A stretch of 64,000 nucleotides of DNA from Octopus sinensis (Eukaryota): positions 26,908,001 through 26,972,000 of the forward strand of contig NC_043006.1 of NCBI RefSeq assembly GCF_006345805.1, given 5' to 3'. How positions within the stretch are numbered: position 1 is the stretch's first letter; the number at the start of each line of letters is the position of its first letter. Both the position numbers and the translations under genes were made by a program. The notes under the pieces are model-generated. The model saw nothing but the letters and a program-made list of their open reading frames with translations, did not search any database and was not told the origin of the DNA. Below are positions 24,089 to 53,237 of this stretch, piece after piece.

Positions 24089-24163
24089 AAGTTTAATGCA
24101 GGCTCTCTGTATGATATTGATTTAATGGCATTTCTTCGAGGACGTTTAACACTAAAGGTGTCC
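24089..24163 (-). CDS. SGO: Shugoshin exon 8, first half of SGO motif (DTFSVKRPRRNAIKSISYREPALN)
   Basis: Acceptor ttttatttatcag, donor gtaagt, 75 nt, phase 2 to 2. Matches the SGO motif consensus RR..Y.EP.L. Confidence 0.93.
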
Positions 24164-28998: not shown

Positions 28999-29352
28999 CT
29001 AAAAAGAAAAAAAAAAGAAAGTTTCTTAATTCAAATTGAAAATGGACCAGTTTGTTTATTTTAATAGAGAAACAATAGGAGAAAATACAAACAAACTAAG
29101 TTACCTTGAAGTACTCAGTTTTCAATTTCATTACTTTGAAGCATAATATTTAATTACATCAAATTCATATAAGCATTTCCTCAAATAGATTCTGTAAATT
29201 TGTGACTGTAGACCTGCATTTTGTTTTGTAGCAGAAATTACGAATTACCATGTCAGTGAATGTTTTCACCTAAGCAGCATTTTTATATTTTGCATCCTTT
29301 CATTTCATTATAGAAAGGCAGTGAAACAAATTAGAAAAAAAGAAATACACAC

Positions 29353-30051
29353 CTCTTTCATCTTCCTTTTTATCCTTTGAGCTCTTTGACGATTTTTTGT
29401 TGCCTTTTGCTTTTACTTTATTAGGTGCTACTGTTGGTTTAACAAAAGTTTCTTTAGCAACAGTCGTATCTTTTTGTTTCTCCAGATTTATATCAGATGG
29501 ATGAACATCATTACCAGTTGGTAGATTTTGTGATGACTCATGCATTACGTCAGTGTTGTTTATTATTTCAGTCAATTCCATGTCAACTTCACCAGTTATT
29601 GTAACGTTGGGTATGGCATTATTTAAACCATTATCAGCATCATTAACTATTAAGGCTGTTTCTGCAGCTTTACCATTTGGCATTGATGCATCAGTACAAG
29701 GAATATGGTTAGAGTTATTTTTAACTACTTTATCCCTGTCAGCTGCATTTTCCAAATTAACTTCTTCTGCACAAGAATCTTTAATAACTGACGGTTCTAA
29801 AATATCCAATTGTTGGTGACGCTTTTTGTCAAGACCTGTAGCAGACAAGTGTAATGAAGAGCGGCGCCTTTTTCGGGTAGTTGGGAGATTTGAACCAAAA
29901 TCGATTTCATCCAGAGATTCCCGTCTAAATTGAATACTGGAACGTCTTTCTACATCAGGGCGACTTTTAGTAGCAATTTTAGGTTTTTCAATGGGGACGT
30001 TTAAATGATTTTCGTCAGCATTTTTACACAATTTTTCAGATTCCAATTCAA
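29353..30051 (-). CDS. SGO: Shugoshin exon 5, downstream copy (5A), 699 nt
   Basis: Acceptor tcattttttag, donor gtgtgt, open frame (ORF track 29300-30046). Phase 1-1 joins exon 6 in frame. Confidence 0.85.
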
Positions 30052-30557
30052 CTAAAAAATGAATAGGAAAAGAAAAGAATTAGGTTTTACCTTTATCATA
30101 GAAAACAAAATTATGAAAAATAATAATTTATTACTAGCTGGACCCATGAAAAATTCATGGAAAACATAAAAAATGTAAGCATGTGTAAATTGTGTGCTGG
30201 TGCCATGAGAAATGTTTCTATATTGTGACGGTTACAGAATATAGAAAGAAGTGTAAAACCGATAACTATATAATCCAACCAAAATATTTCAGTTATGCAA
30301 ACATAAACAGAATTACTGTTTAACCTTAAAATACATTGTACATATTCAAAGAACCTTTGTGGTTTAGTGGTATGGAACGTTCCTGTGATATTCTTTTGTT
30401 CCTTTACTTGTTTGTCATTTGATGGTGGCCATGCTGGAGCACTACTCTTTAGTTGAAGAAATCGACCCCTGGACTTAATATTCCCTGTAAGCCTGGTGCT
30501 TATTCCATCAGTCTCTTCTGCTGAACATCTAAGTTATGAGGACACAGACACACACAC

Positions 30558-30599
<42 letters not shown>

Positions 30600-30603
<4 letters not shown>

Positions 30604-31128
30604 ACGGGAACGAATAGCTTATTGCACTTTTTGGGTGCAGTTGGTGCAATCACTTTCCGTTGCTTTTAATATCCAGATTCTACCAGTCAGAAAACACAAG
30701 ACACAAACGTAAAAAATATATATACTTTATTCTCTTATCCACAGAACGAAATAAGTGGTGTATCTGGTATCCCTTGGTATGGATGTGTCAGAGCTGAACT
30801 TTATCGCTTGTAAGATTTTACAATGTTCAGCCGCTAAAAAACAGAACTAGTCAAAATGGCGTCCGGAGAGAGCGAAAAGACTACGTCTGCAACCTTCAGT
30901 CGCCGTGTCTCAAGTCACTGCCTACTGCTGCTATATCTCTCTGGACCCTTTTAAGGTTCACGCTCCCTTCGCCTAACAAGCCAAACGCCACGTCAGCAAA
31001 TTCCCTCTTCCGGTCTTTGCGCATGCGCGAGAGGGCTCTTCCCCTCTGCCTTGGTGAAAGCACCAACTCCGCACGCGCGAAACAGAAAAGGGCGGTGCGC
31101 GCGCACACCGTTGTATAGGATCACTACA
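30600..31128 (-). mobile_element. 3' LTR (LTR-A, 529 bp) of a minus-strand Ty3/Gypsy element
   Basis: TGTAGTGAT...CGTTACA termini. Polypurine tract ggggggggagc at 31131-31141. AATAAA at 30726-30731. Confidence 0.85.
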
Positions 31129-32200
31129 AAGCTCCCCCCCCAGTGCCTAAGCATGAACAATATTCCTTGTAGTGACTAATAAAAACTCAAGGTGGATACC
31201 AGATAACCAAAATAGCACACAATATAACAAAATGGCAGAATTTACAATATACACAAGAAAATTTACCAAAAGGAAAAAAGAGAAAAAATACTCAAAATGA
31301 GCAAAATCAAAGGTGCATGTGTGAATAAGAATAGCTTCCGGCCAACGTGAGAAATGATCGATAAAGTTAAATATATATGAGAACCCATTACTCACAGACC
31401 ATGGTCCAACCAAATCAAGGTGGACATGGCGAAAACGGGCTTCAGGAGAAGAAAACTGTCCAAGTGGAGCACGAACGTGTCCATGGACCTTAGCACTCTG
31501 GCACTTCAAACAAGAGCATGCCCAAGAGGTAATCGATCGTCGCATATTGGGCCAAAAGAACTGTGGCAGAGATACCTGGATGTGACAGTGAATGAAGAGC
31601 ATCAAACACAGAACGTTGATGTTTCTCAGGTACTAACGGTCTAGGAGAACCGGTGGATACGTCACAAAGTATAGAGCCTTCCGCTGAAAGGAGCAGAAGC
31701 TAGGCAAACTTACAGTTAATAAACCTAGGCGAAGTTAAATCCAACTCCTCTAAAGGTGGTTGATCCTGCGAAATAGCAGTTAAGTCAATTGCTGCAGGAG
31801 AGGAAATGGAATTGACAGATAGATCGCTAGTAACACAAAAGGCAGACAGTGCTTCAGCTGAAAGTGTAAGGTTAGCAAGGTGACAGTGCAAGCATGCTGG
31901 TGTGATGCGCGAGACAGATAATTTTCTCTGTTAATTACGTGACCAACAGGGGTCTAACAGGGAAAAAATTACGCCTAAACATGGGCGCAGTGCATGTGAA
32001 CATCCGACGTTCTTTGAGTCGGGAAAATAATTGAGCTGACGCAGACGTGTTGCAGAACAAGGCAGTACACGTGCAGAACAGAGGTGCATGAATGCAATAG
32101 GGCTTGCTAGACTGAAACACAGCAATGAATATGCCAGTGGTTAATGTAGTAAGGCTGAGGCTGCCAGCCAGTGCTTGAGCGATTATATGCCTCGGTCGTG
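31129..32200 (-). mobile_element. Internally deleted pol remnants (RT end, linker, integrase) of the minus-strand Gypsy element
   Basis: FFWPNMRR..C..CQ..HVHLDLVGP..FSRWPEA, SSPAAIDL..QDQPPL and LTLSAEALSAF match the plus-strand pol but are fused across deletions. Confidence 0.8.
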
Positions 32201-32422
32201 CAGGAACAAAAGTGTGACATGCTGGCGCGTTATAATGGACAAACAACTTTCTCTATGTATACGTGATCGACCTAGGGTCTTACAGAGATGAGTTGTGTCT
32301 ACAAAGGCAAATTGAGCATGGAAAAACAAGCGAGAAAGGCATGTGTGACGTATGAATGTGAGAGAGATAGATGTGTGTGTATTAACTATGTGTGTACGTG
32401 TGTGCGACAGAAGTACAAACAA

Positions 32423-32440
32423 GGTGACCCCGACGTGATT
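32423..32440 (+). promoter_or_regulatory. tRNA-Trp primer-binding site
   Basis: (a)GGTGACCCCGACGTGATT is complementary to the 3' end of eukaryotic tRNA-Trp. The first T of TGG is replaced by A. Confidence 0.8.
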
Positions 32441-33022
32441 CTGGTCTTAAACCAGAGATCACTTAACAACAAAAAAATCCAATGCGAGCAAAATAAAAAT
32501 ACACCGCATAGGAAAAAAAAGTCTCTCAGGGTATTTCAGACAAGATGGAGTTAATTTACCAGTCCGTAATAGCCTGATACATAATAGCAGTTCGTTCTGT
32601 AACAGAATGCTGAGATCACAAATGCAGATGCCGATTGAACACATGTCGTGTAGCGGTTGTGGCTTCAATGCTGTGACAGGTTAAATTGGTACAGAAGATC
32701 TCGCAGGTAGACTGTGCTGTTAATCCTGGTGTGTATACACTAACAGCGTGAAAGCTAAACTTCCGCGAGTTGCTATTTACATATTGTTGAGGTCGACGGT
32801 GTTGAAGGCGACAGTGACGGACTTGAGACACATTGTTGCTTAGTGTTGCTGGCGACGAAGATAACGACGACGTGAAGTCGAAAGACAACGATGGTGATGA
32901 CGACGGCAGAGAAAAGGCATCGATGATATGAAGGTGTCCGTGGTGTATGTTAGTGTCGTCATTATTGCTGTAAATAAGAGAGGCTCCTTTTATAACTGTT
33001 TGAGGGGACCGGAAACAAATCG

Positions 33023-33424
33023 TTGAAGGATGATGACTGTGCACAGTTGATCGTGTTCAGACTTGGCAGAAAAAACTGGATTTTTTTGTTCACAGCACTG
33101 GATTCTGTGTCTGTGGACCAGATCGCCACGATGGCCGACAAGGTGTTGGAGTTTTCGCGCCCATCTCCCTCGCGGGGCCTGTACGCATGTACAGGGCCCC
33201 CTCCGACGAACGATAAACTAGCCGAGAACATCTATGCGCTTACGCGGAGAATCGATGATCTATGCCGTGCGATCGGGCGCCTATCTCGCAGTCGTAGTCG
33301 CTCTATTTCCCGTAGTCGGAGTGACTATGTTTCTCGTTCCAGCTGGTGCTGGTACCATTCGAAGTATGCTGAAAAGGCAGATCGGTGTACCCAGCCGTGC
33401 ACTTTCAAGCCCTCAGAAAACTAA
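33023..33424 (+). CDS. gag: Gag C-terminal part with CHCC motif (CsRn1 clade)
   Basis: CWYHSKYAEKADRCTQPC is C-X2-H-X9-C-X3-C. RS-rich segment precedes it. The Gag N-terminus is absent. Confidence 0.85.
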   Translation: MKDDDCAQLIVFRLGRKNWIFLFTALDSVSVDQIATMADKVLEFSRPSPSRGLYACTGPPPTNDKLAENIYALTRRIDDLCRAIGRLSRSRSRSISRSRSDYVSRSSWCWYHSKYAEKADRCTQPCTFKPSEN

Positions 33425-36400
33425 ATCCGGAGGAGGTGAGCACGTCACCTTCTTCCATCTCGTTTCCCAAACATCGTGCATTCTTTGTAAAAGATCTGGT
33501 GTCGAAGAAATTCTTCATGGTGGACACCGGCTCCTGTTGCAGCATCTGGCCCCTTTGTCTGGCTGCAGACAAGCCCAAGCGCTCTTCGATTGTCTTGCAT
33601 GCTATTGACTCGTCTCCCATAACCACTTACAGTCAGATTTCGCTGCGCCTCGACCTCAACCTTCGTCGAGACTTTCAATGGGTTTTCGTCATAGCTGACA
33701 TCCCGCATCCTATTCTCGGCGCTGATTTCCTGGATAGGTTTAATCTATTGGTGGATGTCAGGCGTCGGAGGCTTCTTGATAGCACGACGTCGCTCTCTAC
33801 ACCAACTGAGAGTTCCACCACTGCGGTCCTTAGCCCGACATTCTTTGTTGCCACCTCTGGAGACCCTTTTCGCTCTCTTTTGGTTTCATTTCCGGAGCTA
33901 GTGGACATTGCCTTTAAACCGGAAAAGCCTACCCACTCGACCCTCCATTTCATCACCACCAATGGGCTACCTGTATTTTCACGACCACGGCGCCTTGCGC
34001 CAGACCGACTAAAAGCGGCCAGGGCCGAGTTTGAGCACATGCTTCAACTTGGCCTTATACGCCCCTCCACCAGCCCATGGGCATCTCCCCTTCATTTGGC
34101 GCGAAAGGGCGAGTCTGATTTTCACCCGGTTGGAGACTATCGACGCCTCAATGCCGTAACTATAGCCGACAGATACCCGATTAGAAATCTCCGGGACTTT
34201 ACGGCAAATCTCCATGGTTGTACCATTTTTTCGAAGGTCGACCTTATACGCGCGTACCATCAAATACCGGTCAACCCAGCCGACGTTCCGAAAACTGCGA
34301 TCACTACCCCCTTTGGGTGTTTTGAGTTTTTGTACATGAGTTTCGGTTTGCGGAATGCTACTAGCACTTTCCAGCGTTTCATTGATGAGGTTGTCCGTGG
34401 TCTTGATTTTGTGTTTGCCTATGTCGATGATATACTCATTGCGAGCGACACACGTAAAAATCATCTCCAGCACCTTTCTCAGCTTTTTCAGCGTCTTCGC
34501 GCTTATAGCATACGCATAAATCCCGACAAGTGTGTTTTCGGACGCTCTTCCCTAGATTTTCTAGGCCATCATATTGATTTGACTGGAATCAGCCCTCTCT
34601 CGTCAAAAGTCGATGCCATTCAACGCATCGCACCCCCCACTTCCCTGCGCCAGCTCAGGCATTATCTAGGGATGATCAATTTCTACCGACGTTTCATTCC
34701 CGGTTGTGCAGATAAGCTGCTACCTCTCACCAGGCTGTTAAAGGACTCTCCTAGAAAGGACAGTCAAGTCACCCTCTCTGTTGAGGCAGTGACAGCCTTT
34801 GAGTCCATTAAGAAGGAGCTGGCTTCTGTTTCTTTGCTTGCACATCCAGTTCCTGGTGCTTCTCTCTCTTTGACTGTGGACGCATCGGACACTGCGATTG
34901 GCGCTGTGTTACAACACAGTGGATGATCATATTCGACCTCTAGCTTTCTTTTCCCGTCAACTGCAACCAGCTGAACGACGATACAGCACCTTTGATCGTG
35001 AGCTCCTAGCGATCTATCTATCAATTCGTCATTTCCAGCATCAACTTGTAGGGCGAGATTTTGTGATCTATACGGATCACAAGCCCCTTACGTTTGCCCT
35101 GTTTTCAAAAACGGACAAACTCTCACCCCGTGCCTTTCGGCACCTGGATTCTATCTCTCAATTCACTAGCAACATTCGACACATACCTGGAAAAGAGAAC
35201 GTTCCTGCTGACGCTCTCTCTCGCCTTCCAGTTTGCGCCCTCTCGTCTCCGGCTGCTATCGACTTAGCTGCCATCTTGCAGGAGCAGCCACCTTTGGCGT
35301 CGTCAGACTTGACTTCTCCCAAGTTCTCCTGTTGCCAGTTTTCCTACCTTCCGCTTCCGTCAGCCGAAGGCACCATTCTTTGTGATACTTCCACTGGTTC
35401 TCCCAGGCCACTGGTGCCTGAGAACCATCAACGCTCAGTGTTTGAAGCACTGCACTCCTTATCACATCCTGGCATCGCTGCCACCCTTAAACTAATCACT
35501 GCTCGGTTTTTCTGGCCGAATATGCGTCGCACTATTACTTCTTGGACATGCACCTGCTCCAAGTGTCAACGATCCAAGATTCAACGGCACGTTCGTGCCC
35601 CGCTTGGTCAATTTCCCCCCATGGAGGCCCGTTTTCGCCATGTCCACATCAATCTGGTTGGACCATGGCCTGTGAGTCGCGGGTTCTCTTATCTGTTAAC
35701 TTGTGTCGATCGCTTCTCCCGCTGGCCAGAAGCCATTCCGATAGCAGACATTTCTGATGAGACTGTTGCGCGAGCTTTCGTTTCAAACTGGATTTCCCTC
35801 TTCGGAGTCCCGTCCCGATTAACAACTGATCGTGGACGTCAGTTTGAAGCCTCGCTATTTCGCGAATTGTCGCGAATTTTAGGTGTGCACCACATCCACA
35901 CTACAAGCTACCATACAGCGTCTAATGGATTAGTTGAGCGGTTCCATAGACAGCTCAAGGCCGCTCGTCGTGCCTCTTCAGACCCACAGTCCTGGATTGA
36001 ATTTCTGCCCATTGTGCTTCTCGGCTGTCGGACTGCTGTCGAGGCAGACCTGGGGTTTTCTGCTGCAGAGCTGCTGTATGGTACCACACTGGCATTGCCT
36101 GGTACGATGTTGGTGCCAGACACTTCCCAGCCCCATGATCCGGCGACCTATGTCACCAGACTACGTGCATATTTTTCGAACCTTCCACCCATGGTTCCCA
36201 GAAAGCAATCTCCACTGTCCCATCTTCCACCAGATATGAACACCTGGTCGCATGTTTTTGTTCGGGACGACTCTGTGAAGGGCCCACTTGTTTCTCCCTA
36301 CAAAGGACCTTTCCGTGTGCTTTCTCGCACACCAAAGGTTTTCACGATTGAGATAAATGGTCGTTCAGAGACCGTTTCCGTGGACCGTTTAAAGCAAGCA

Positions 36401-36703
36401 CATTTTGAGACGTCTTCATCTTTTGATGACAACCTTGACACACCCACCTATGCACCTTTAACAACACATTCACCTGCACAAACGCCTTCACCTGCACAAA
36501 CGCCTTCACCTGCACAGACACCTTCACCTGCACAGACGCCTTCACCTGCACAGACGCCTTCACCTGCACAGACGCCTTTGCCTTCACCGGCTCCTACAAC
36601 ACCACCCTCGCCGTCAACGGGTGCCCCGAGCACACCGTATGTTACAAAATCGGGCAGAACAGTGCATTGGCCCAAGAAACTTTCAAAGACAATCTACATT
36701 TAA
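33385..36703 (+). CDS. pol: Pol (protease, RT, RNase H, integrase) with a single frameshift near 34918
   Basis: MVDTGS protease; YVDD RT; DASD..IGAVL and YTDHKPL RNase H; HHCC zinc finger, DLVGP/TTDRGRQF/NGLVERFH integrase; GPF motif. ORFs 33385-34926 and 34898-36703. Confidence 0.95.
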
Positions 36704-36835
36704 CTTTCTTTCAAAAATTTTTCTTCTTGTATGATATTATGTACCAAGTCTTCTGGGGGATCGGCAAGCCTTCTGTTTTCTGCAGCACCACCACAAATTT
36801 TCTTGTTGTCGTACTTCGCACTCGGAGGGGAGCCT

Positions 36836-37240
36836 TATAGTGATGCTACTGTGTAGGGTTCAGCGCGCATGCGCAGAATGGGACTACTTCCGGGTGGCCA
36901 CCGGAAGTCTTCCCTCATGCGCATGTGCGGGAAACGTTCCCTCAAGCCCACCAAGCTCAAATCTTTCTCTCCGGCTCCACAGCTTGCCGCGATAGGACGT
37001 ACATTCAACGGCTCTGACAACCTCACTGATAGCCTCCATCGACCATCAACAAACTAACACGTAGCTGTATATCAGAGGCTGTCTTTCTCCCATCAGACAC
37101 GTACGACATCACAATAAATAAACGAACTGCTGTCTTTTTACCTTCAACCTGACTTCGTCTGTATTGTCTTATAAGATTATATGTGACTAGATCGGATATC
37201 GACACCTTTTCAGTGAATCGATAACAGATCCTTCGTTACA
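36836..37240 (+). mobile_element. 3' LTR (LTR-B, 405 bp) of the plus-strand CsRn1-clade element
   Basis: PPT ggaggggagc at 36824-36833. Starts TATAGTGAT (TG changed to TA), ends CGTTACA, contains AATAAA. Confidence 0.85.
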
Positions 37241-37385
37241 CCTTGTTTCCACACCTGAAACTTCTCCAGTTCTGATAGTGACTCAGCAATTAGAGCAAGG
37301 TCATCAGCATAGAGGAGCTCCTAGGGGCATCCTGTCTTGAATTCCTCCGTTATTGCCTGGAGGACTATGATAAATAGGAGAGGAC

Positions 37386-37433
<48 letters not shown>

Positions 37434-37444
37434 TATATATGTAC

Positions 37445-37475
<31 letters not shown>

Positions 37476-38615
37476 CATGCATATATATGTACCTTTTTCT
37501 TTCTCTATGCTACCCAAAAAAACATCGCCATTTTCCACCCGTTTCTCTTAAAGTACCTTCAATCCTTTAATTCGATCTTCACCATTCGCGGTGCCTTCAA
37601 ACCCAAAATTACCATTATTAGCCCCAACCAAACTTCCTTCTTCCCCAAACTCAGACTTCCGGTCAATCTATTTATATGCACCGTCTCTCCCCACTCCTAT
37701 CATTTCTTCTCCGATTCACAGCGATGTCTATAGCAAGCTAAGATTTCTCCCTTCTTTTTCATACATACATACATTTGCCTACCGTTTAAATGTTTTGAAC
37801 TTATACCACCAACAAGCTTTGCTTTCCTTTTTCTTTCTCTATGCTACCCCAAAAAACATCGCCATTTCCCGCCCGTTTCTCTAAAGTACCTTCAATCCTT
37901 TAATTCGATCTTCACCATTCGCGGTGCGCCCACCCTTTCCCACCCCCACCACCAATACCGGTGAACACTGTTCTCACTGTTCACACCATCTACACCGGAT
38001 ATGCCCTCCCCCACCACCATTATGTGTGTGTCTCTCCCTCCTACCACTCCTCCTCACATGCTTTCACTGTGTATTACCCCTCCACCACCACCAAGACAAG
38101 CAGCTAGCGCTGCAGCTCATCAACTGCCCCACCTATCCTACGTTTCCTCCTGTTATTGAATCTGTCACTGCCTCAACCGGCTATCTCCTTCCAGTCCCCT
38201 CCCCCACTCGTGATGTCCTACGTTTTATTTCCTACGAACCTGCATCAACCCTAGCTGTCATCGTTCCTCCTTACTCCAACCCTCCCCACTGGTGCTTCCC
38301 TATATTACCTGCACCCCCAAAAGCACCATCTGAACGTGGCCGATGCCAGCGCTGCCTTGGCTGGCTTCCGTGCCGCTGGCACGTTAAAAGCTCGAACCGA
38401 TCGTGACCGATGCCAGACCCACCCTGGCACCTGTGCAGGTGGCACGTAAAAAGCACCCACTACACTTGCGGAGTGGTTGGCGTTAGGAAGGGCATCCAGC
38501 TGTAGAAACTCTGCCAGATCAGACTGGAGCCCGGTGCAGCCTCCTGGCTTCCCAGACCCCGGTCAAACCGTCCAACCCGTGCTAGCGCGGAAAACGGACG
38601 TTAAACAATGATGAT

Positions 38616-38678
38616 ATGTGTGTGTGTATGTATATATATATATATACATGCATATATATGTACATATGTATGTGTGTG

Positions 38679-38719
<41 letters not shown>

Positions 38720-38776
38720 GCATATATATATATATATATATATACATGCATATATATGTACATATGTATGTGTGTG

Positions 38777-38813
<37 letters not shown>

Positions 38814-38885
38814 GCATATATATATATATATATATATATACATGCATATATATGTACATATGTATGTGTGTGTATGTATATATAT

Positions 38886-38944
<59 letters not shown>

Positions 38945-38973
38945 GCATATATATGTACATATGTGTGTGTATG
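38616..38973. repeat. Compound (TA)n/CATG/TGTG microsatellite array
   Basis: Visible directly. The same motif recurs at 37390-37490 and 41235-41380. Confidence 0.9.
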
Positions 38974-41230
38974 TCATCATCATCATTTAACGTCCGCTTT
39001 CCATGCTAGCATGGGTTGGACGGTTCAACTGGGGTCTGGGGAGCCCGAAGGCTGCACCAGGCCAGTCAGATCTGGCAGTGTTTCTACAGCTGGATGCCCT
39101 TCCTAACGCCAACCACTCCGAGAGTGTAGTGGGTGATTTTATGTGCCACCGACACAGGTGCCAGACGAGGCTGGCGAACGGTCACGCTCGGATGGTGTTT
39201 TTATGTGCCACCGACACAGGTGCCAGACGAAGCTGGCGAACGGCCACGCTCGGATGGTGTTTTTATGTGCCACCAACACAGGTGCCAGACGAAGCTGGCG
39301 AACGGCCACGCTCGGATGGTGTTTTTATGTGCCACCAACACAGGTGCCAGACAAGGCTGGCAGACGACCACGCTCGGATGGTGTTTTTATGTGCCACCGA
39401 CACAGGTGCCAGACGAGCCTGGCGAACGGCCACGCTCGGATGGTGTTTTTATGTGCCACCGACACAGGTGCCAGACAAGGCTAGCAGACGACCACGCTCG
39501 GATGGTGTTTTTTATGTGCCACCGACACAGGAGCCAGATTAGGCTGGCGATCGGCCACGATTGGATGGTGATTGTTACGTGCCCACAGCATGGAGGCCAG
39601 TCGGTGCGGTACTGGCTACGGCCACGTTCGGATGGTTTTCTTGTGTGCCACCGGCACTGGTACCACAAGGATACAAATTCCATTGATGTTCATCTATTTT
39701 GATTTTGTTTGATTTTCACCTGCCTCAACAGGTCTTCACAAGTATCACAAGAAGGAAGGTATGCACAGGTGGACTGACTACGTCCCAGGTAGGGGCCACG
39801 GGTTATGGCCTGACTAGTCTTGCCGGGTCTTCTCACACACAGCATACTTCCATAGGTCTCGGTCTCTAGTCATTTCCTTGGTGAGACCTAAACTTCGTAG
39901 GTCGTGCTTCACCACTTCGTCCCAGGTTTTCCTGGGTCTACCTCTTCCACAGGTTCCCTCAACTGCTAGGGTGTAGCACTTTTGCACACAACTATCTTCA
40001 GCCATTCTCGTCATATGACCATACCAGCGCAGCCGTCTCTCTTGCACACCACAACTGACGCTTCTTAGGTTCAACTTTTCTCTTAAGGTACTTACACTGA
40101 CGATTATGAACACTGATATTACACATCCATCGGAGCATACTGGCTTCATTTCTTGCGAGCTTACGCATATCCTCAGCAGTCACGGCCCATGTTTCACTAC
40201 CATGTAGCATGGCTGTACGTACACATGCATCATAAAGTCTGCCTTTTACTCTGAGCGAGAGGCCTTTTGTCACCAGCAGGGGTAAGAGCTCTCTAAACTT
40301 TGCCCAGGCTATTCTTACTCTAGCAGTTACACTTTCAGCACACCCACCCCCGCTACTAACTTGGTCTCCTAGGTAGCGGAAGCTATCAACTACTTCTAGT
40401 TTGTCTCCCTGGAACGTGGTAGAAGTTGGTCTCTGCACATTTCCAGTGTTTATTTCTCCTGAGCATCTGCCACATACGAAAACTATCTTCCCAGTTAGCC
40501 TACCTTTGACATTGCTGCACCTCTTATGTGTCCATAGCTTACACTTGGTGCACCTTATAGAGTTTCTACGTACACCTTTTTTACAGATCGAGCAGGGCCA
40601 TCTACCTGAAGTCGTTTGTGGTTGGTCCACCTTCCTACTTATTAGGACTTTGGTTTTGGCTAGGTTGACTCTAAGGCCCTTTGATTCTAATCCTTGTTTC
40701 CACACCTGAAACTTCTCCAGTTCTGATAGTGACTCAGCAATTAGAGCAAGGTCATCAGCATAGAGGAGCTCCCAGGGGCATCCTGTCTTAAATTCTTCCG
40801 TTATTGTCTGGAGGACTATGATAAATAGGAGGGGGCTGAGGACTGAACCTTGGTGGACCCCAACCTCTACCCGGAATTCTTCACTGTACTCGTTGCCAAC
40901 CCTCACCTTACTAGCTGCGTCTCTGTACATGGCTCGCACAGCTCTCACTAACCATTCATCTATCCCTAGTTTCCTCATTGACCACCAGATAAGGGATTGG
41001 GGGACCCTGTCAAAGGCTTTCTCCAAGTCAACAAAAGCCAGGTACAAGGGCTTACCTTTGGCTAGGTATTTCTCCTGCAGCTGTCTTACCAGGAATATAG
41101 CATCAGTAGTACTTTTCCCTGGCACGAACCCAAACTGCATATCATCTAAGCAAACTCTCTCTCTCTAATTAACTGGGCTATAACCCTCTCCGTAACCTTC
41201 ATTACCTGATCCAACAGCTTGATGCCCCTG
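38974..41230 (-). mobile_element. 5'-truncated RTE-clade LINE: RT ORF with PHD-like insert, long 3' UTR, (GAT)n tail
   Basis: QFGF.PG.STTDAIF, DLEKAFD, GVHQGS.LSP, LYADD, RYLG, RPRKTW. One frameshift near 40070. Confidence 0.92.
39137..39570. repeat. 62-bp tandem repeat, about 7 copies, inside the RTE 3' UTR
   Basis: atgtgcc recurs at 39141, 39203, 39265, 39327, 39389, 39451 and 39514. Confidence 0.9.
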
Positions 41231-41266
<36 letters not shown>

Positions 41267-44200
41267 GCATATATATGTACATATGTGTGTGTGTATGTAT
41301 ATATATATATATACATGCATATATATGTACATATGTGTGTGTATGTATATATATACATACACAATCATACATATGCATACATATTTATATACACCTATGT
41401 ATCTGCATACATATACAAATATATATATGCATGTGTGAATGTGTGCACACATGCATGTTTTAGATTGAAGTCAGTAAAATACATTATCCTATAATTAAAA
41501 AAGGAAATAAGGACTTGTATCATAAAGGGCAAGCATGGAAAAATGAACCAAAACAAAAGAAAAAGAAATGTAAGTATATAAAAAAATGTAAGTATATATA
41601 CAAATATATATCTACATATGATCATTCACATAACATTTATATATATATATATATTATATATATAATATATATATATATATATACACTGATATAGATATAT
41701 ATGATATCATCATCATCATCGTTTAAAGACCACTTTCCATGCTGGCATGGGTTGGATGGTTTGAGTGACGGCTGGCAAGCCAAGAGGTCGCACCAGGCTC
41801 CAATCCGATCTGGCAATGTTTCTACAGCTGGATGCCCTTTCTAATGCCAACCACTCTGAGAGTGCAGTGGGTGCTTTTCACATGCCACTGGCACAAGGGC
41901 CTGTCAGGCAGTACTGACATCAGCCATGCTTGAATGGTGCTTCTTATGTGCCACCGGAAAGGAAGCCAGTCAGGTGGCACTGGCAACAGCCACACTCGAA
42001 TGGTGCTTTTTACATGCCATTGGCACGGGACCAGTCAGGCGACACCAGCATCAACCACACTCGAATGGTGCTTTTTACATGCCACCAGCACAGGTGCCAA
42101 TCAGGTGGTACTGTCATCGAACAGAATGACGACTTCACTTGCCTCAACAGGTCTTTGCAAGTGCAGTTTATTCCCCAATGATTGAAGGGTACTCTTTGAT
42201 GGGCTGGTCATACTGCACTGGCATAGGCCACGGTTACGGTCTCACTAGGCTTGCCGAGTCTTCTCAAGCACAGCATATCTCCAAAGGTCTTAGTCAGTTG
42301 TCATCACCTCGGTGAAGCACAAAGTTTGATGATTGTGCTTCAAGTGAATGATAATATTTTGAAAACAAAAGTGTTTAATATTCAATTTCATATACATCTA
42401 TTTTGTGTGTGCGTGTGTGTGTGTGATAAACTAAACTGATAAACTAAATACAATTTACAATAAAACTCTGCAGTTTTATTTTGATTAAAATATCAGCTTT
42501 TTCAGAGCAAAACCATTGAATGCTGTTTGCCTGCCTTTTAGTGTCTCTGTCATTCACTGCCACTCCATTTACAGTTGTTTCCCTAGCATGGCCAATGAAA
42601 CACACATTGCGCTTTATTATATGTAAGATTAAATCAATAACATGGTCTACTGGGCTAAATTTAGGTGTGTAGGCATAGTACAGGAACAGGCAGGGTTATA
42701 TGGTTAAGAAACTTGCTTCCCAACCATGTGGTCTTGGGTTCAATCCCAATGTTTGACACCTTGGACAAGTGCCTTCTACTATAACCCCAGACCAACCAAA
42801 GCTTTGTGAGAGGATATGGTAGAATGGAAACTGAAAGAAGCCTATCGTCTGACAAATGTATCATTTTTACTACTTTTATGGCTGGGTACCCTCTCTAATG
42901 CCAACCCCTATAGTGTACTGGATGCTTTTTACATGACGCTGGCACTAGTGAAGTCACTAAGTAATTAAGACCCCTCAACTGAGTTGGATAGTAGGACTGA
43001 GGAAGTAGCTTTATATTAGGTGATGAGAAGTTAAATTAAGATAGGAATCAGAAACAGGTGTCTTTCTATAGGGGAGCTACATAGTTACCCTTGTTGGTCA
43101 AGAAAGAGAATGGTAATGAAGATGCTTCAGGGCATAACTTCAGATTACAGGAAGGTGAATAAAAGAGATATGGGCAGGTAAGTAAGTTTGTAGGAATGTA
43201 AGAAGTGAGTGGCAGATGGATAATGACGGGGATAGAGGGTAACTGCAGTGAGTGATGAACATGATGGAGGCATGGTCAATTGTGAATATTAGGTGGAAGG
43301 AATGTTGGAGGAAGTAAGTGTTGATCAGGAAGGTAATAGATGGCAGCAAAGAGGACATGAAATGGAGTGGGGTGCAAAAGTGATGCAAAGTGCCAGGGTA
43401 CAGAAAGGTGGAAATAGTAGGAGATAGAAAGAGGTAATGGGGTGGGTTTATTAACATTATTCTTTGAGCAAATAAGATCAGTATTTGAAAACACTGAAAA
43501 GAAATTTGTAACTAAATAAGCAGTGAGTGGCTTTTTAAAATTTAATTATCAGTTAATCTCATTTTACAGCATCACTTCAATTTTTCTAATAAACATTCTG
43601 CACAGCAAGCTTGTTGCTACACAGCTGGCTAGCAAAAGTAGACAATATTCTTCTACTGATGAAGCCTGATAACATTGGCCAGAGAAGAATGTTAGATAAA
43701 CCATATTTTTTTTCTCAATTGAACAGCTACAAATTTCATCTTACACTTCATTTTGACTCTTAATAGTTCTTATAATTTGACTGACATACTCTTTTCAGTA
43801 CAATCCCTTTATCCACAGAGCAACAGATGATGATACTGGTACTCCAGTCTTTATAATAATACTTTGTCTAATTTCATTAACTCAACAACAATTACTCAAA
43901 ACCCTGCAGCTTTCTGTCTTTTGTATCCTATTCACTGCCTGATATTTCAAGCATAACTTGTCGTATTTCATTCATGCTCTCCATATAGCAAAATAATTTA
44001 TAAATTACTGTGTAATTTATAAAAGCAACAAAATTGGCCATTTTCTCTGTTGCTGGGTACATCAAATGATGAAGTACCACAACAAGTGGTAACATGCTGA
44101 GATACATCCAACCCATGCTAGCATAGAGAGCTAGATGTAAAACGATCTGCTTATGTAAATATTTTTCTCACCAAGAGCCCTGTGCTGGTGGCATGTAAAA

Positions 44201-44431
44201 AGCACCCATGCCAGCACCATATAGTAGTGCCCATGCTGGCACCACATAAAAGCACCCATGCCAATGCCCCATAAGGAAGGATCCCAGCCATCTCTGTAAA
44301 ATGGTTGGCATTAGGAAGGGCATCCAACTGTAGAACTCAAACCACATCAAAGTGGAAACTGGTGCAGCTCTCCTGTCTGCCAACTCTGGTCAAACTGTCC
44401 AACCCATGCCAGCATGGAAAACAGACATTAA

Positions 44432-44651
44432 CCCTTTCATTACCAACCTGGCTGAAACCAGCTCTGGCTCTGAGTACAAATGTCTTGTTTTCATAAGTTT
44501 TGAATTAAAATTTTCCACCAAACCCTAGTCACAATTTATGCTCCTAACACTAGCTTAATGATAACTAAGTTATTTTACTAAATTCTTTGTTATATTTAAA
44601 GTAATTGAAAGAAACACAGGGCATCTTAAAATAAATACAGTAACAAAAGGG
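44432..44651. mobile_element. piggyBac-type MITE
   Basis: TTAA|CCCTTT...AAAGGG|TTAA. Confidence 0.8.
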
Positions 44652-44769
44652 TTAAATAATGACGATAGTGACTCTTCTGCAAAGTTTTCAAAAGCATAAA
44701 ACATTTGTTTATACAATACTTTTGGCAAATTTACTGTGAATATCTGGAGTATTTAAACATGGGATATTT

Positions 44770-44925
44770 TTAGAGTTAATCAAGTGTATTTGAAATAAAA
44801 ATCCAGCTTGATAAAAAAAAAAAACACAGCAAACAAGCTTAGACCATTAAAAATCTGGAGATATACATTTTTCTTCAAGACAACATCACCCATGATATTT
44901 TTATAGAGTAAAACCTCTTTTTTAG
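44770..44925 (-). pseudogene. Decayed duplicate of shugoshin exon 4 (pseudo-exon)
   Basis: Translates as KKEVLLYKNIMGDVVLKKNVYLQIFNGLSLFA versus exon 4 NEKVLLNKDAIGDVALKKNVNSQICDELSFIA. About 21 mismatches in 91 aligned nt. Acceptor and GT donor are missing, and a poly-T run shifts the frame. Confidence 0.8.
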
Positions 44926-45198
44926 TAAATTTGACATTGGAGAAATTTGAACTCAGACACTAAAGTCTTGGAATAAATGCTGCAAGACCTTCCATCAAAT
45001 GTTGTAATAAGTCTTAATTCCCCACCAATAGAATTAAAGCAATTTATTCTCACAGAGCACTACATTTTGTTTTGTAGCAGAAAATATGAATTACCATGTC
45101 AGTGAATGTTTTCACCTAAGCAGCATTTTTATATTTTGCATTCTTTCATTTCATTATAGAAGGGCAGTGAAACAAATTAGAAAAAAAGAAATACACAC

Positions 45199-45897
45199 CT
45201 CTTTCATCTTCCTTTTTATCCTTTGAGCTTTTTGACGATTTTTTGTTGCCTTTTGCTTTTACTTTATTAGGTGCTACTGTTGGTTTAACAAAAGTTTCTT
45301 TAGCAACAGTCGTATCTTTTTGTTTCTCCAGATTTATATCAGATGGATGAACATCATTACCAGTTGGTAGATTTTGTGATGACTCATGCATTACGTCAGT
45401 GTTGTTTATTATTTCAGTCAATTCCATGTCAACTTCACCAGTTATTGTAACGTTGGGTATGGCATTATTTAAACCATTATCAGCATCATTAACTATTAAG
45501 GCTGTTTCTGCAGCTTTACCATTTGGCATTGATGCATCAGTACAAGGAATATGTTTAGAGTTATTTTTAACTACTTTATCCCTGTCAGCAGCATTTTCCA
45601 AATTAACTTCTGCACAAGAATCTTTAATAACTGACGGTTCTAAAATATCCAATTGTTGGTGACGCTTTTTGTCAAGACCTGTAGCAGACAAGTGTAATGA
45701 AGAACGGCGCCTTTTTTGGGTAGTTGGGAGATTTGAACCAAAATCGATTTCATCCAGAGATTCCCGTCTAAATTGAATACTGGAACGTCTTTCTACATCA
45801 GGGCGACTTTTAGTAGCAATTTTAGGTTTTTCAATGGGGACGTTTAAATGATTTTCGTCAGCATTTTTACACAATTTTTCAGATTCCAATTCATCAA
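45199..45897 (-). CDS. SGO: Shugoshin exon 5, upstream copy (5B), 699 nt
   Basis: Acceptor tcattttttag, donor gtgtgt, open frame (ORF track 45146-45889), symmetric phase 1-1. Confidence 0.75.
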
Positions 45898-47174
45898 CTA
45901 AAAAATGAACAGGAAAAGAAAAGAATTAGTTTTTCTCTTTATCATGAAATAATGATAAATAACAATAAGCAAATATTACATAGAACAGAATTCTATTTTC
46001 CCCAGGGTCTTAATAATGTGTATCAACTTTAATTACAATTTTATCATAATTATTAATTTATCTCTGTACCATTGATTTGTTTTTTGATAATGTCAAGCAA
46101 AATGGAAACATCAAGAAAATAGACTTGAAAAATGTTTCATGAAAAACATTCATGATATCTCAATCAGTATAAAACAATAAAAAAAAGTCTGAAAAAGAAC
46201 ATTACTTTTAAAATGGAACATAAAGTACATAAGAAAGTTTATAAGAAAAATCTGTGTAACTGCATTTTGATCTCATAATCATTGGGATCATTTTACTTGG
46301 AAAAAATATTCGCTACCACCATCAAAAGATAGATAACATTCCATAACTGAATATAGAGATCATCTTTGATGTTACAAAGTTCTCTAAAAAAAATATTGCT
46401 AGTAGATTAGCTTCTGCTGTTCCTCCGCTATATCGAATGTTCATAAATGAAACGTTGTGATGCCAGGAAATGAGATTGGTTAATTGATAATCTAATTATA
46501 AAGGGGAACCAAATACATAAGTATTTCTTTTATTATAATAATGGGGGCCTCTGCAGTCAAAGCTGATCATTCATCTGCAAGCAGGGGTGAGGTTTTTTTT
46601 TATTATTATTATTATTTTTTTTATTCATCCATGTAACTCTTCCCACTCCAATACCACCAAGGTTGCCTAAGGGAAATGCTGCTGAGTTGGCTGATGCAGC
46701 TTGATACCCTTGCCACCACATGTGTTTCTACAGTGTACAGAACCAGAAAACGATATTGTAAGGCATCTTCTTTGACCTAGCAGTTTAACAATCCACCACT
46801 CTGAATTAATTTTTCTTTGTCATCCTTGCAAAATTGAAAGGCAAAATTAACATCATCATCTTTTAACATCCACTGTCCATGCTAGCATGGTTAGACAGGA
46901 CCTCATGAAATTTGAGCACAGAGTTGGGACAAATACCACAAGGCATTTTATTCAACACTAACAGCTGTACTATTTTGCCTTTCATTATACTTCTAATGTA
47001 TTAAAGTGGTGTCAGAAAAAAACCTCCGAAATTCTGTAATAGATTTTATATAACATTTTATCTCAATTTTTTTTTATTCAAATTACAGGCACATACAGTG
47101 AAAATTACTTAATTTTCACCATATACAATAAACTGTTAGTAATTTATAATTTCATCAGTTTGTCCTTGTTTTGT

Positions 47175-50208: not shown

Positions 50209-50366
50209 CTTTAGACAACACATCAAGTGTATTTGAAGTATAATCCGTATTAATAAAAGTCTCAGCAATGAAGCTGAGCTCATCACAAATCTGGGAATTA
50301 ACATTTTTCTTTAAAGCAACATCACCTATGGCATCTTTATTGAGCAAAACCTTTTCATTAGGGGTT
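50209..50366 (-). CDS. SGO: Shugoshin exon 4 (TPNEKVLLNKDAIGDVALKKNVNSQICDELSFIAETF...DVLSK)
   Basis: Acceptor ttttcttttgtatttag, donor gtaaat, 158 nt open frame. Phase 2 to 1 exactly bridges exon 3 and exon 5. Confidence 0.85.
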
Positions 50367-53166: not shown

Positions 53167-53237
53167 GCCACTTTACCTCCCTTTCTTTTAAGCATTAAAT
53201 TACCAAAATAATATTTACCAAAATAATATTTACTTAC

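What the first reader, a model, noticed from the sequence alone, without database searches (positions are those of the whole stretch)
29217..45946. A 699-nt shugoshin coding exon is present twice, 15.85 kb apart, both copies spliceable and in frame
Exon 5A (29353-30051) and 5B (45199-45897) differ by 5 substitutions (3 synonymous, plus N/K and R/Q) and two 3-nt indels that cancel, so both are 699 nt. Both keep AG and GT sites and are symmetric (phase 1-1). Shared sequence covers about 135 bp of downstream intron and about 45 bp of upstream intron, then stops. The gene could make a 1,052-aa protein (mutually exclusive use) or a 1,285-aa protein with a doubled 233-aa spacer that repeats the basic RKRRRSS cluster and RRSS/RRES kinase sites. 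That would lengthen the link between the PP2A-binding coil and the cohesin/H2A-binding end. I do not know of an internally duplicated exon of this size in a shugoshin.
Basis: partly seen in the sequence, partly recalled or inferred. Interest (0 to 1): 0.75.

Follow-up and report, generated by a model that had tools for sequence, protein, structure and literature searches.

The report
Duplicated central exon in octopus shugoshin
The octopus shugoshin gene really does carry its 699-nt central exon twice, and public gene models already splice both copies into one longer protein, so this is a real but ordinary tandem exon duplication, apparently kept near-identical by gene conversion.

Summary
Exons 5A (29353-30051) and 5B (45199-45897), on the minus strand, are each 699 nt, open and phase 1-1. 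They differ by 5 substitutions and two 3-nt indels.

The window is Octopus sinensis LOC115216772, a shugoshin homologue. It is not an assembly artefact: an independent O. vulgaris assembly has both copies with orthologous unique flanks.

It is already annotated. RefSeq isoforms X1-X4 and the O. vulgaris model contain 5B and 5A in tandem. X5 has 5B only. No 5A-only construct matched a database protein. Mutually exclusive use is therefore not supported. I saw no RNA reads; splicing rests on annotation.

A dead pseudo-exon 4 (44698-44925) and colinear intron pieces show an older tandem duplication of exon 4 to exon 5. The 0.9-kb near-identical tract is best explained by gene conversion shortly before the O. 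sinensis / O. vulgaris split.

The exon is not just a spacer. It carries two conserved motif islands, which doubling duplicates. Argonauta hians has a separate, partial doubling of the first island. Sepia and other molluscs have one copy.

Verdict: new member of a known kind, moderate interest.

The parts
29353..30051 (-). Exon 5A, the downstream copy. It is 699 nt, phase 1-1, and encodes 233 aa (VELESEK...KKEDER).
   Evidence: Open frame and AG/GT sites. Present after 5B in RefSeq isoforms X1-X4 and absent from X5. Orthologue in O. vulgaris within the match L003:31748-32635.
45199..45897 (-). Exon 5B, the upstream copy. It is 699 nt, phase 1-1, and encodes 233 aa (VDELESEK...KKEDER).
   Evidence: Open frame and AG/GT sites. 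Present in all five RefSeq isoforms, and the only copy in X5 / P0002. Orthologue in O. vulgaris within the match L003:21476-22362.
29214..30127 (-). High-identity tract around 5A. It spans 139 nt of downstream intron, the exon, and 53-76 nt of upstream intron.
   Evidence: 97.7% over 891 bp and 96.6% over 917 bp. Four-sequence site patterns with O. vulgaris.
45060..45966 (-). High-identity tract around 5B, the partner of 29214-30127.
44698..44925 (-). Pseudo-exon 4 plus the start of its intron, a decayed paralogue of exon 4. The acceptor AG and donor GT are lost and there are frame-breaking indels. It lies about 135 nt downstream of the 5B tract.
   Evidence: 73.5% identity over 234 nt to 50136-50361, E = 6e-34. 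It is the only other copy in the window. Splice-site loss is shown. It is also present in O. vulgaris at L003:22500-22724.
50209..50366 (-). Exon 4 (158 nt, ends in phase 1), the functional parent of pseudo-exon 4.
43729..44166 (-). Three colinear old paralogous intron pieces: 44076-44166, 43788-43903 and 43729-43770. They match 50013-50102, 49880-50000 and 49852-49894 in intron 4.
   Evidence: 74-88% identity and colinear. The last two pairs are unique in the window. The first partly overlaps a SINE.
30128..44697 (.). Intron between pseudo-exon 4 and 5A, mostly transposon-derived. It holds an LTR-retrotransposon pol (33385-36703, +), an inverted integrase fragment (31147-31605, -), a LINE reverse transcriptase (39998-41140, -), SINEs, microsatellites and 62-bp repeats.
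   Evidence: Pfam RVT_1, RNase H, rve and Integrase_H2C2 hits. Repeats. Blocks 37493-41231 and 34586-36540 are absent in O. vulgaris, which explains the 15.85 kb against 10.27 kb spacing.
27533..28998 (-). Exon 6 (1,466 nt). It begins with the 2 nt that complete the split codon from exon 5. It encodes the conserved LRLPKPGK...FDFHDKTP block and an internal SGO-motif-like RRTRSKVVSYAEV.
   Evidence: Homology to P0001, P0003 and P0004.
57079..57287 (-). Exon encoding the N-terminal coiled coil (SNNKALAHALQVARQDL...), the shugoshin PP2A-binding coil homologue.
   Evidence: Sequence. A profile of mollusc N-termini hits human SGO1 chain 3FGA_D with E = 6e-4.
24088..24162 (-). Exon encoding the first half of the C-terminal SGO motif (SVKRPRRNAIKSISYREPALNL). 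The second half, KLRQGDELF, is at 19399-19455. The conserved last exon is at about 12860-12925.
   Evidence: Pfam Shugoshin_C on P0002 residues 1013-1034, 17.5 bits.

Best explanation
**Identity.** The window holds most of Octopus sinensis LOC115216772, the octopus shugoshin homologue. It has an N-terminal PP2A-type coiled coil, a long disordered middle and a C-terminal SGO motif.

**Origin.** In the octopus lineage a tandem DNA duplication copied a segment running from exon 4 to about 140-270 nt past exon 5.
- The extra exon 4 decayed into a dead pseudo-exon.
- Transposons then expanded the intron between the copies to about 15 kb.
- Both copies of the large central exon stayed intact.

**Maintenance.** About 0.85-0.9 kb around exon 5 was homogenised by intragenic, non-allelic gene conversion. 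The last event fell shortly before the O. sinensis / O. vulgaris split, about 2.5 Mya. That is why the exon copies are about 99% identical while the rest of the duplicated unit is only 73-88% identical.

**Use (inferred from annotation, not from reads seen here).** Both copies are normally spliced in series, 4-5B-5A-6. This gives a protein of about 1,300 aa with a 233-aa tandem repeat. A minor form skips 5A.

**Effect on the protein.** Shown: the repeat doubles two conserved short motif islands, RRxSLDEIDFG..RKRRRSS and EVDMELTEI. Inferred: the consequence is a change in the number of docking or phosphorylation modules in the central region, not just a longer linker.
For: **The duplication is real.**
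- 891 bp at 97.7% identity.
- Both copies, their unique flanks and pseudo-exon 4 are found orthologously in the independent O. vulgaris chromosome assembly. Flank identity is 98-99% and the spacing there is 10.27 kb.

**The gene is a shugoshin.**
- The exact protein is XP_036362311.1.
- The N-terminal profile hits the human SGO1 coil 3FGA_D with E = 6e-4.
- Shugoshin_C lies at the C-terminus at 17.5 bits in Octopus. It scores 31.7 and 25.1 bits in the homologous Batillaria and Mytilus proteins.
- UniRef names the O. vulgaris orthologue 'Shugoshin C-terminal domain-containing protein'.

**There was an older, larger duplication.**
- Pseudo-exon 4 is 73.5% identical to exon 4, E = 6e-34.
- Colinear intron pieces are 74-88% identical.
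- The pseudo-exon has lost both splice sites.

**Gene conversion.**
- Identity comes in three tiers: 73-88% for the old unit, about 88% for the 76-nt upstream flank, and about 99% for the exon.
- In the O. sinensis / O. vulgaris four-copy alignment, the upstream flank has 8 fixed paralogue-specific substitutions.
- The exon has none, and the 139-nt downstream flank has only one, at its outer edge (29216). The two indels are the only other fixed differences.
- One site, 29471/45317, is species-specific in both paralogues.

**Use of both copies.**
- My constructs with 5B and 5A in tandem are exact matches to RefSeq X1 (1313 aa) and X2 (1302 aa). X3 and X4 also hold both, and X5 holds 5B only.
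- The O. vulgaris model, from a pipeline that used Iso-Seq, RNA-seq, protein alignments and ab initio predictions (PMC10700109), has the same 1302-aa architecture.

**Motifs.** DEIDFG..RRSS is conserved in all cephalopods sampled. DM[ED][LF]TE[IV] is conserved out to Batillaria and Mytilus.
Against: - No RNA reads or junction counts could be examined. The splicing pattern rests on gene models, which can be shaped by ab initio prediction or protein alignment.
- Evidence for purifying selection on each copy is weak. Since the last homogenisation there were 5 nonsynonymous against 4-5 synonymous changes (dN/dS about 0.3, P = 0.04-0.11). The exon is not significantly slower than the downstream flank (P = 0.25).
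- The O. sinensis 5B lineage carries 8 of 12 lineage-specific changes. This could mean relaxed constraint, although half are intronic and the whole B region diverges faster between species.
- The duplication junction could not be resolved.
- A second, recent 0.9-kb copy-and-replace event cannot be told apart from gene conversion.
Confidence: 0.7

Rival explanations
1. Mutually exclusive splicing. Each mRNA carries either 5A or 5B, giving two 1,052-aa proteins that differ at about 4 residues.
For: The two exons have equal length and phase, with duplicated intron flanks. This is the usual raw material of mutually exclusive exons (PMC9013439, PMC6071210). X5 carries only one copy.
Against: X1-X4 and the O. 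vulgaris model carry both copies. No 5A-only construct is in the protein collection. Joint inclusion keeps the frame, because 699 = 3 x 233, so nonsense-mediated decay cannot enforce exclusivity. The intron between the copies is 15.1 kb, so there is no steric block. No selector/docking complementarity exceeds shuffles (z between -1.4 and +0.1). Two proteins that differ by two substitutions and two 1-aa indels would offer little functional diversity.
Confidence: 0.06
2. Only one copy is really used. The other is a silent intronic relic that gene-prediction pipelines stitched in because it is open and has consensus splice sites, so the true protein has a single exon 5.
For: I saw no read-level evidence. 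X5 (5B only) shows that a single-copy mRNA model exists. The selection signal on the copies is weak. An open 233-codon frame can survive a few million years by chance when gene conversion keeps refreshing it.
Against: Two independent annotation pipelines, one informed by Iso-Seq, give the doubled model. All four copies in the two species keep the frame, both splice sites and only in-frame indels. The neighbouring pseudo-exon 4, from the same duplication, decayed completely. This shows what an unused copy looks like here.
Confidence: 0.17
3. Assembly or haplotype artefact. The genome has one exon 5, and the second copy comes from a mis-joined alternative haplotype.
For: High identity of the copies. 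Octopus genomes are repeat-rich.
Against: There are no gaps in the window. Only 0.9 kb is shared and the flanks are unrelated. Both copies sit at orthologous places in the independently sequenced O. vulgaris assembly. The two indels and 8 flank differences are fixed per paralogue in both species.
Confidence: 0.01
4. The doubling is ancestral to incirrate octopods. On this view it is shared by Octopus and Argonauta and kept by concerted evolution in both, rather than arising twice.
For: Argonauta hians also has two in-frame copies of the 5' part of exon 5, 2.5 kb apart. They share a 376-nt tract at 97.3% identity and then diverge abruptly. Both lineages double the same DEIDFG..RRSS island.
Against: Octopus pseudo-exon 4 is closer to Octopus exon 4 (71-74%) than Octopus exon 4 is to Argonauta exon 4 (59%). 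This points to a duplication after the split, unless exon 4 was also converted earlier. No pseudo-exon 4 was found in Argonauta. The tract boundaries differ. The apparent old intron matches in Argonauta are SINE copies.
Confidence: 0.3

Closest known systems
Tandem exon duplications in animal genes (Letunic et al. 2002 as cited in Ivanov & Pervouchine 2022, PMC9013439)
   Same: A DNA-level tandem duplication of an exon with its intron flanks inside one gene. The copies have equal length and phase. The result is an internal protein repeat and/or alternative isoforms. About 10% of animal genes are reported to contain such exons.
   Different: The exon is unusually long at 699 nt. PMC9013439 reports that duplicated-exon signal falls about fourfold from 20-nt to 220-nt exons. 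The copies are 15.8 kb apart because of later transposon insertions. The duplicated unit originally also held exon 4, which died.
Mutually exclusive exon clusters with competing RNA structures (Dscam, ATE1, srp; PMC6071210, PMC7797038)
   Same: Origin by tandem duplication of an exon plus adjacent intron. The exons are homologous and have equal phase.
   Different: Annotated mRNAs here carry both copies in series. No frame, steric or RNA-structure mechanism for exclusivity was found.
Human SGO1 large central exon 6 and its splice variants
   Same: A shugoshin whose large central exon encodes the disordered middle region with short docking motifs. In human SGO1 the cohesin-binding Y335-x-F337 motif lies in exon 6, with T346 close by (PMC10279526). 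Isoforms differ in content of the central region: full-length A1/A2 against the small C2/sSgo1 form (PMC4385833). That C2 lacks exon 6 is my own recollection.
   Different: No exon duplication is known there. Sequence equivalence between the octopus DEIDFG and EVDMELTEI islands and the human YxF/T346 segment was not shown. A 50-aa segment around the EVDMELTEI island gave no PDB match to SGO1.
Concerted evolution of tandem duplicates by non-allelic gene conversion
   Same: A short tract of near-identity with sharp edges sits inside an older, more diverged duplication. Paralogue-specific differences are shared by two species outside the tract but not inside it.
   Different: The converted unit is a single coding exon within one gene, not whole genes. 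Only one possible post-speciation conversion site was seen.

Membership tests
Shugoshin (SGO / MEI-S332) family | N-terminal coiled coil homologous to the PP2A-B56-binding coil | tested here: met
   A profile of 7 mollusc N-termini, including the window's, has human 'Shugoshin-like 1' chain 3FGA_D as its best PDB hit (E = 6e-4, 22.9 bits). The alignment is NNKaLAqaL...lr against NNKMLVLAL...LR. Pfam Shugoshin_N itself did not fire on single sequences.
Shugoshin (SGO / MEI-S332) family | C-terminal basic SGO motif (Pfam PF07557 Shugoshin_C) | tested here: inconclusive
   P0002 residues 1013-1034 match profile positions 2-23 of 24, but at 17.5 bits (E = 0.0037), below the curated cut-off of 23.3. 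The homologous Batillaria (31.7 bits) and Mytilus (25.1 bits) proteins pass. They match the window protein at E = 9e-14 and 1e-11. The motif lies at the expected C-terminal position.
Shugoshin (SGO / MEI-S332) family | Centromere localisation and PP2A-dependent protection of cohesin | not testable with these tools
   Needs cell biology.
Tandem exon duplication | Two homologous exons, same strand and order, within one gene, with homology extending into the flanking introns (a DNA-level event) | tested here: met
   The intron flanks of 139 nt and 53-76 nt are shared.
Tandem exon duplication | Copies keep length, phase and splice sites, so either or both can be spliced in frame | tested here: met
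   Both are 699 nt, phase 1-1, with AG/GT sites. All four combinations are open in the spliced model.
Mutually exclusive exons | Exactly one exon of the pair in every mature transcript | tested here: not met
   RefSeq X1-X4 and O. vulgaris CAI9728244.1 contain both copies. This rests on annotation, not on reads.
Mutually exclusive exons | An enforcing mechanism: a frame shift on joint inclusion, an intron too short to splice, or competing selector/docking RNA pairing | tested here: not met
   699 is divisible by 3. The intron between the copies is 15.1 kb. Duplex energies of the shared flanks against the unique neighbouring introns do not differ from shuffles (z from -1.4 to +0.1). Only about 0.2-0.5 kb of each neighbouring intron was scanned, using mononucleotide shuffles.
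Concerted evolution by non-allelic gene conversion | A tract of much higher identity with sharp borders inside an older paralogous unit | tested here: met
   73-88% for pseudo-exon 4 and the intron pieces, against 96.6-97.7% for the tract. The borders are at 29214/45060 and about 30104-30127/45949-45966.
Concerted evolution by non-allelic gene conversion | Species-specific substitutions shared by both paralogues, showing conversion after speciation | tested here: inconclusive
   Only one such site, 29471/45317: A in both O. sinensis copies and G in both O. vulgaris copies. Parallel mutation or lineage sorting could explain a single site.

The most novel reading that the evidence does not exclude
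Octopods have repeatedly gained, or have long maintained, a second copy of the shugoshin central module that carries the RRxSLDEIDFG..RRRSS island. It is full-length in Octopus and partial in Argonauta, and in both the copies are kept near-identical. On this reading, selection favours a bivalent docking or phospho-regulatory module in the centromeric cohesion protector. Regulated skipping of 5A (isoform X5) would switch between monovalent and bivalent forms, for example between meiosis and mitosis.
Probability: 0.2. Interest if true: 0.6.

Novelty: new member of a known kind. Interest (0 to 1): 0.4.

Why it matters
Shugoshin protects centromeric cohesin in mitosis and meiosis. Its disordered middle region works through short docking motifs. 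A natural variant doubles a 233-aa block holding the two motif islands conserved across the cephalopods sampled, and a single-copy isoform is also annotated. This is a ready-made test of how motif number and spacing affect shugoshin function.

The locus is also a clean example of three things seen together:
- an exon 4 to exon 5 tandem duplication in which one extra exon died and the other survived;
- gene conversion acting on a single exon inside a gene;
- transposons inflating the intron between the copies from an unknown smaller size to 10-16 kb.

For annotation, it shows that 'uncharacterized protein LOC115216772' is the octopus shugoshin. It also warns that read mapping and variant calling in exon 5 will be ambiguous.

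Tried and rejected
- **Pfam on single exons and on my first 901-aa model.** Nothing, or only E = 0.034 on the internal RRTRSKVVSYAEV motif. Identity had to come from full-length homologues and a profile against PDB.
- **Word-indexed protein search with exon 5A.** No hits. With exon 6 it returned only an ENA contig protein. The index clearly misses the RefSeq proteins, which the exhaustive HMMER search later found.
- **My first selection argument** (exon 0.7% against flanks 4.7%, P = 6e-4). I withdrew it as evidence of purifying selection. The four-copy comparison shows the contrast comes mainly from the older upstream flank lying outside the last conversion tract, and from O. sinensis 5B-specific changes.
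- **Old colinear intron matches in Argonauta**. These turned out to be SINE copies and are not evidence for an old duplication there. In Octopus, the pair 48964-49115 / 30400-30553 is also a repeat with a third copy and was dropped.
- **Duplication junction.** Between 45059 and 44926 there is no detectable similarity to intron 5 or intron 3.
- **Docking/selector RNA complementarity.** No signal. An earlier, larger run timed out.
- **Transposon-mediated capture of the exon.** No terminal repeats, target-site duplication or poly-A at the tract borders (read by eye), and the colinear older paralogy explains the layout better.
- **RNA-level evidence through the protein collections.** No Logan transcript-derived octopus proteins were returned.
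- **Self-BLAST for internal repeats.** It misbehaved and was replaced by a k-mer offset count.

Full report
**1. The observation**

The two regions were read directly and compared by BLASTN. A single match joins 29214-30104 to 45060-45949. It has 873 identities in 894 columns (97.7%), with 14 substitutions and 3 small gaps. A repeat scan of the whole window finds the same pair at a spacing of 15,843-15,846 bp and no third copy.

The gene runs on the minus strand. On that strand both 699-nt segments are open in one frame. Each is preceded by ...TTCATTTTTTAG and followed by GTGTGTATTT.

- Five substitutions lie in the exon: three synonymous, plus R/Q and N/K.
- Two 3-nt indels cancel in length.
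- Nine substitutions and one indel lie in the 192 nt of shared intron.

The window has no N runs.

**2. What gene this is**

Single exons gave nothing in Pfam, and word-indexed protein searches were nearly blind. A hand-built spliced model was open with one, two or no copies of exon 5. I searched it exhaustively with HMMER.

The best hit is 100% identical and is XP_036362311.1, 'uncharacterized protein LOC115216772 isoform X5 [Octopus sinensis]'. Further hits were:
- the Argonauta hians orthologue;
- a Sepia pharaonis protein, plus a Logan transcript-derived protein in the same 90% cluster;
- gastropod and bivalve proteins that UniRef calls 'Shugoshin C-terminal domain-containing protein'.

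Pfam Shugoshin_C lies at the extreme C-terminus. It scores 17.5 bits in Octopus, below the 23.3 cut-off, but 31.7 and 25.1 bits in Batillaria and Mytilus. A profile of the mollusc N-termini has the PP2A-bound coiled coil of human SGO1 (3FGA chain D) as its best PDB hit, E = 6e-4, aligning the NNKxLAxAL core.

The shugoshin call is therefore well supported, though the cephalopod C-motif alone is sub-threshold. The window holds the gene from its second coding exon (58729-58609) to the conserved last exon near 12.9 kb. The first coding exon lies beyond 64000, as inferred from synteny.

**3. The doubled form is already annotated**

I built 16 candidate isoforms from the window. I then looked ten of them up by exact sequence.
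- The constructs with 5B followed by 5A are exact matches to RefSeq X1 (XP_036362308.1, 1313 aa) and X2 (XP_029642200.1, 1302 aa).
- Their cluster also holds X3, X4 and O. vulgaris CAI9728244.1 (1302 aa). All of these contain both copies.
- X5 contains 5B only.
- No 5A-only or no-exon-5 construct is in the collection.

The O. vulgaris annotation combined Iso-Seq, RNA-seq, protein alignments and ab initio predictions (PMC10700109).

The public models therefore say: both copies in series by default, with occasional skipping of 5A. I could not inspect reads, so this is annotation-level evidence.

**4. Not an artefact**

The O. vulgaris locus (L003, GCA_951406725.2) carries a 5B orthologue and a 5A orthologue.
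- Each matches its O. sinensis counterpart together with that copy's unique flanks, at 98.7% and 97.9% identity.
- The two copies are 10.27 kb apart there.
- The 5.6-kb difference from O. sinensis is explained by two blocks, 37493-41231 and 34586-36540, present only in O. sinensis.
- The two 3-nt indels and eight substitutions in the upstream flank are fixed per paralogue in both species.

**5. The duplication is older and larger than 0.9 kb**

A tblastn hit of exon 4 between the two copies led to a 234-nt match. Positions 44698-44925 are 73.5% identical to exon 4 plus the start of its intron, E = 6e-34. This is a unique pair in the window. It has lost the acceptor AG and the donor GT and has frame-breaking indels.

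Three more colinear intron pieces at 74-88% identity follow it. The ancestral event was therefore a tandem duplication of exon 4, intron 4, exon 5 and the start of intron 5. The same pseudo-exon is present in O. vulgaris. The junction itself is no longer recognisable.

The interval between pseudo-exon 4 and 5A is mostly transposon-derived. It holds an LTR-retrotransposon pol, a LINE reverse transcriptase, SINEs and satellites.

**6. Why the exon copies are so alike**

Identity falls into tiers:
- about 99% in the exon;
- about 96% in the 139-nt downstream flank;
- about 88% in the 76-nt upstream flank;
- 73-88% in the rest of the unit.

In the alignment of O. sinensis 5B, O. vulgaris 5B, O. 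sinensis 5A and O. vulgaris 5A, the patterns are as follows.
- All eight upstream-flank differences are paralogue-specific and shared by both species.
- Across the exon and downstream flank there is no such substitution except at the very edge (29216). Only the two triplet-slippage indels are fixed there.
- Every other difference is specific to one lineage: O. sinensis 5B has 8, O. vulgaris 5B has 1, O. sinensis 5A has 1, and O. vulgaris 5A has 2.
- One site, 29471/45317, is species-specific in both paralogues.

The simplest reading is that the exon and its downstream flank were homogenised by gene conversion shortly before the species split. The upper bound on paralogue divergence at the split is about 0.36%, and the split is dated at about 2.5 Mya (PMC10700109). 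An earlier conversion may have reached slightly further upstream.

This retracts my first argument. The exon-versus-flank contrast is not good evidence of purifying selection. After the last homogenisation:
- dN/dS is about 0.3, on 5 nonsynonymous against 4-5 synonymous events (P = 0.04-0.11);
- the exon is not significantly slower than the downstream flank (P = 0.25).

What does argue for use of both copies is the contrast with pseudo-exon 4. That exon came from the same duplication and decayed completely.

**7. Mutually exclusive splicing**

This was tested and not supported.
- Joint inclusion keeps the frame.
- The intervening intron is 15.1 kb.
- The shared intron flanks show no complementarity to about 0.2-0.5 kb of each neighbouring unique intron beyond shuffled controls.

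The model tested in the last point is that of PMC6071210.

**8. What the exon encodes**

The exon evolves fast, at 27% identity to a decapodiform contig. It nevertheless contains two conserved islands:
- RRxS[LM]DEIDFG followed by a basic R[KR]xRRSS cluster, found in all cephalopods sampled;
- EVDM[ED]LTE[IV], recognisable as ADMEFTEI and SDMDFTEI in a gastropod and a bivalve.

By position they lie where vertebrate SGO1 has its cohesin-binding YxF/T346 segment. Y335 and F337 are in exon 6 (PMC10279526). I could not show sequence equivalence. Doubling the exon therefore doubles conserved motifs rather than merely lengthening a spacer.

**9. Other species**

A k-mer offset scan finds a long internal repeat only in Octopus (233 aa) and Argonauta (175 aa). 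It finds none in Sepia, Batillaria, Mytilus or Potamilus. A decapodiform contig (L001) has one exon 5 within 10 kb upstream of exon 6.

In Argonauta (L002) there are two in-frame exons of 525 and 942 nt, 2.5 kb apart. They share a 376-nt tract at 97.3% identity that covers the acceptor and the first island, and then diverge abruptly. Other intron matches there are SINEs, and no pseudo-exon 4 was found.

Octopus pseudo-exon 4 is closer to Octopus exon 4 (71-74%) than Octopus exon 4 is to Argonauta exon 4 (59%). This favours separate duplications in the two lineages. An old shared duplication with wider past conversion is not excluded.

**10. Verdict**

The finding is real and correctly measured. 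It belongs to a well-known class, tandem exon duplication (about 10% of animal genes according to the work cited in PMC9013439). The doubled protein is already in RefSeq and UniProt, though unnamed. I found no paper discussing it: a search for 'shugoshin' with 'cephalopod' gave 0 hits, and 'shugoshin' with 'exon duplication' gave one irrelevant hit.

The new points from this stage are:
- the older exon 4 to exon 5 duplication with a dead pseudo-exon;
- the gene-conversion tract and its dating;
- the conserved motifs inside the repeat;
- the parallel partial doubling in Argonauta.

Interest is moderate.

Noticed in passing
window 28349-28405 (-), in exon 6: A second, internal SGO-motif-like basic stretch, RRTRSKVVSYAEVDESFD. 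It is conserved in Argonauta (RRARSKVTSYKEIDESFD) and Sepia (RRARSKVISYKEEESDFD). It gave a weak Pfam Shugoshin_C hit (E = 0.034) in addition to the true C-terminal motif. Cephalopod shugoshins may carry two such motifs.
   Followed up: partly
window 14420-14515 (-) versus 12860-12925 (-): There are two alternative last coding exons. The conserved one (...VYRDEVKKRNVLENVTNVN) is used by X2 and matches Sepia and Argonauta. A non-conserved one (ANLLSGIQNLWVCSKLLSLDLSGTTLISLL) is used by X1, X3 and X5.
   Followed up: partly
window 37493-41231 and 34586-36540: Two blocks are present in O. sinensis but absent from the orthologous O. vulgaris interval. The first holds a LINE reverse transcriptase with a PHD finger, SINEs and a 62-bp array. 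One of a pair of 147-nt direct repeats lies just outside it (37241-37387) and the other inside it (40692-40838); they are 96% identical. The second block lies inside the LTR-retrotransposon integrase region.
   Followed up: partly
window 52323-53256: A 31-bp minisatellite of about 30 units lies in the intron between exons 3 and 4. It is open in all six frames, giving mechanical ORFs of 250-282 aa on both strands. It aligns to O. vulgaris in many registers, so copy number may differ.
   Followed up: no
window 36435-36614 (+): An 18-nt tandem repeat encodes (SPAQTP)n at the C-terminal end of the LTR-retrotransposon integrase ORF.
   Followed up: no
window 45060-46250 versus 28999-30400: Divergence between O. 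sinensis and O. vulgaris is about three times higher around 5B (16/1561) than around 5A (5/1405), P = 0.046. O. sinensis 5B carries 8 of the 12 lineage-specific changes in the tract (corrected P = 0.011). The cause is unknown. It could be deeper coalescence, local mutation rate, relaxed constraint or assembly errors.
   Followed up: partly
window 29471 and 45317: This is the one site where both paralogues share a species-specific base: A in O. sinensis and G in O. vulgaris. It is a candidate for post-speciation gene conversion or a parallel change.
   Followed up: partly
window 56204-56623 (+), 15898-17103 (-), 60838-62877 (+): Other mobile-element remnants lie in the gene's introns. One is a Tc1/mariner-type DDE_3 transposase fragment. 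Two are LINE-like ORF stretches without Pfam hits at the threshold used.
   Followed up: partly
L002 (Argonauta hians), protein P0003 residues about 560-690: The downstream exon 5 copy of Argonauta carries a 14-aa tandem repeat (SPKVKEVPVTKAVK-like, k-mer offset 14) that is absent from Octopus and Sepia.
   Followed up: no
P0019 (Mytilus galloprovincialis isoform X1, 1649 aa): The roughly 230 extra N-terminal residues of this shugoshin isoform look like a protein-kinase domain (HRDLK...). This is probably a read-through or fused gene model.
   Followed up: no
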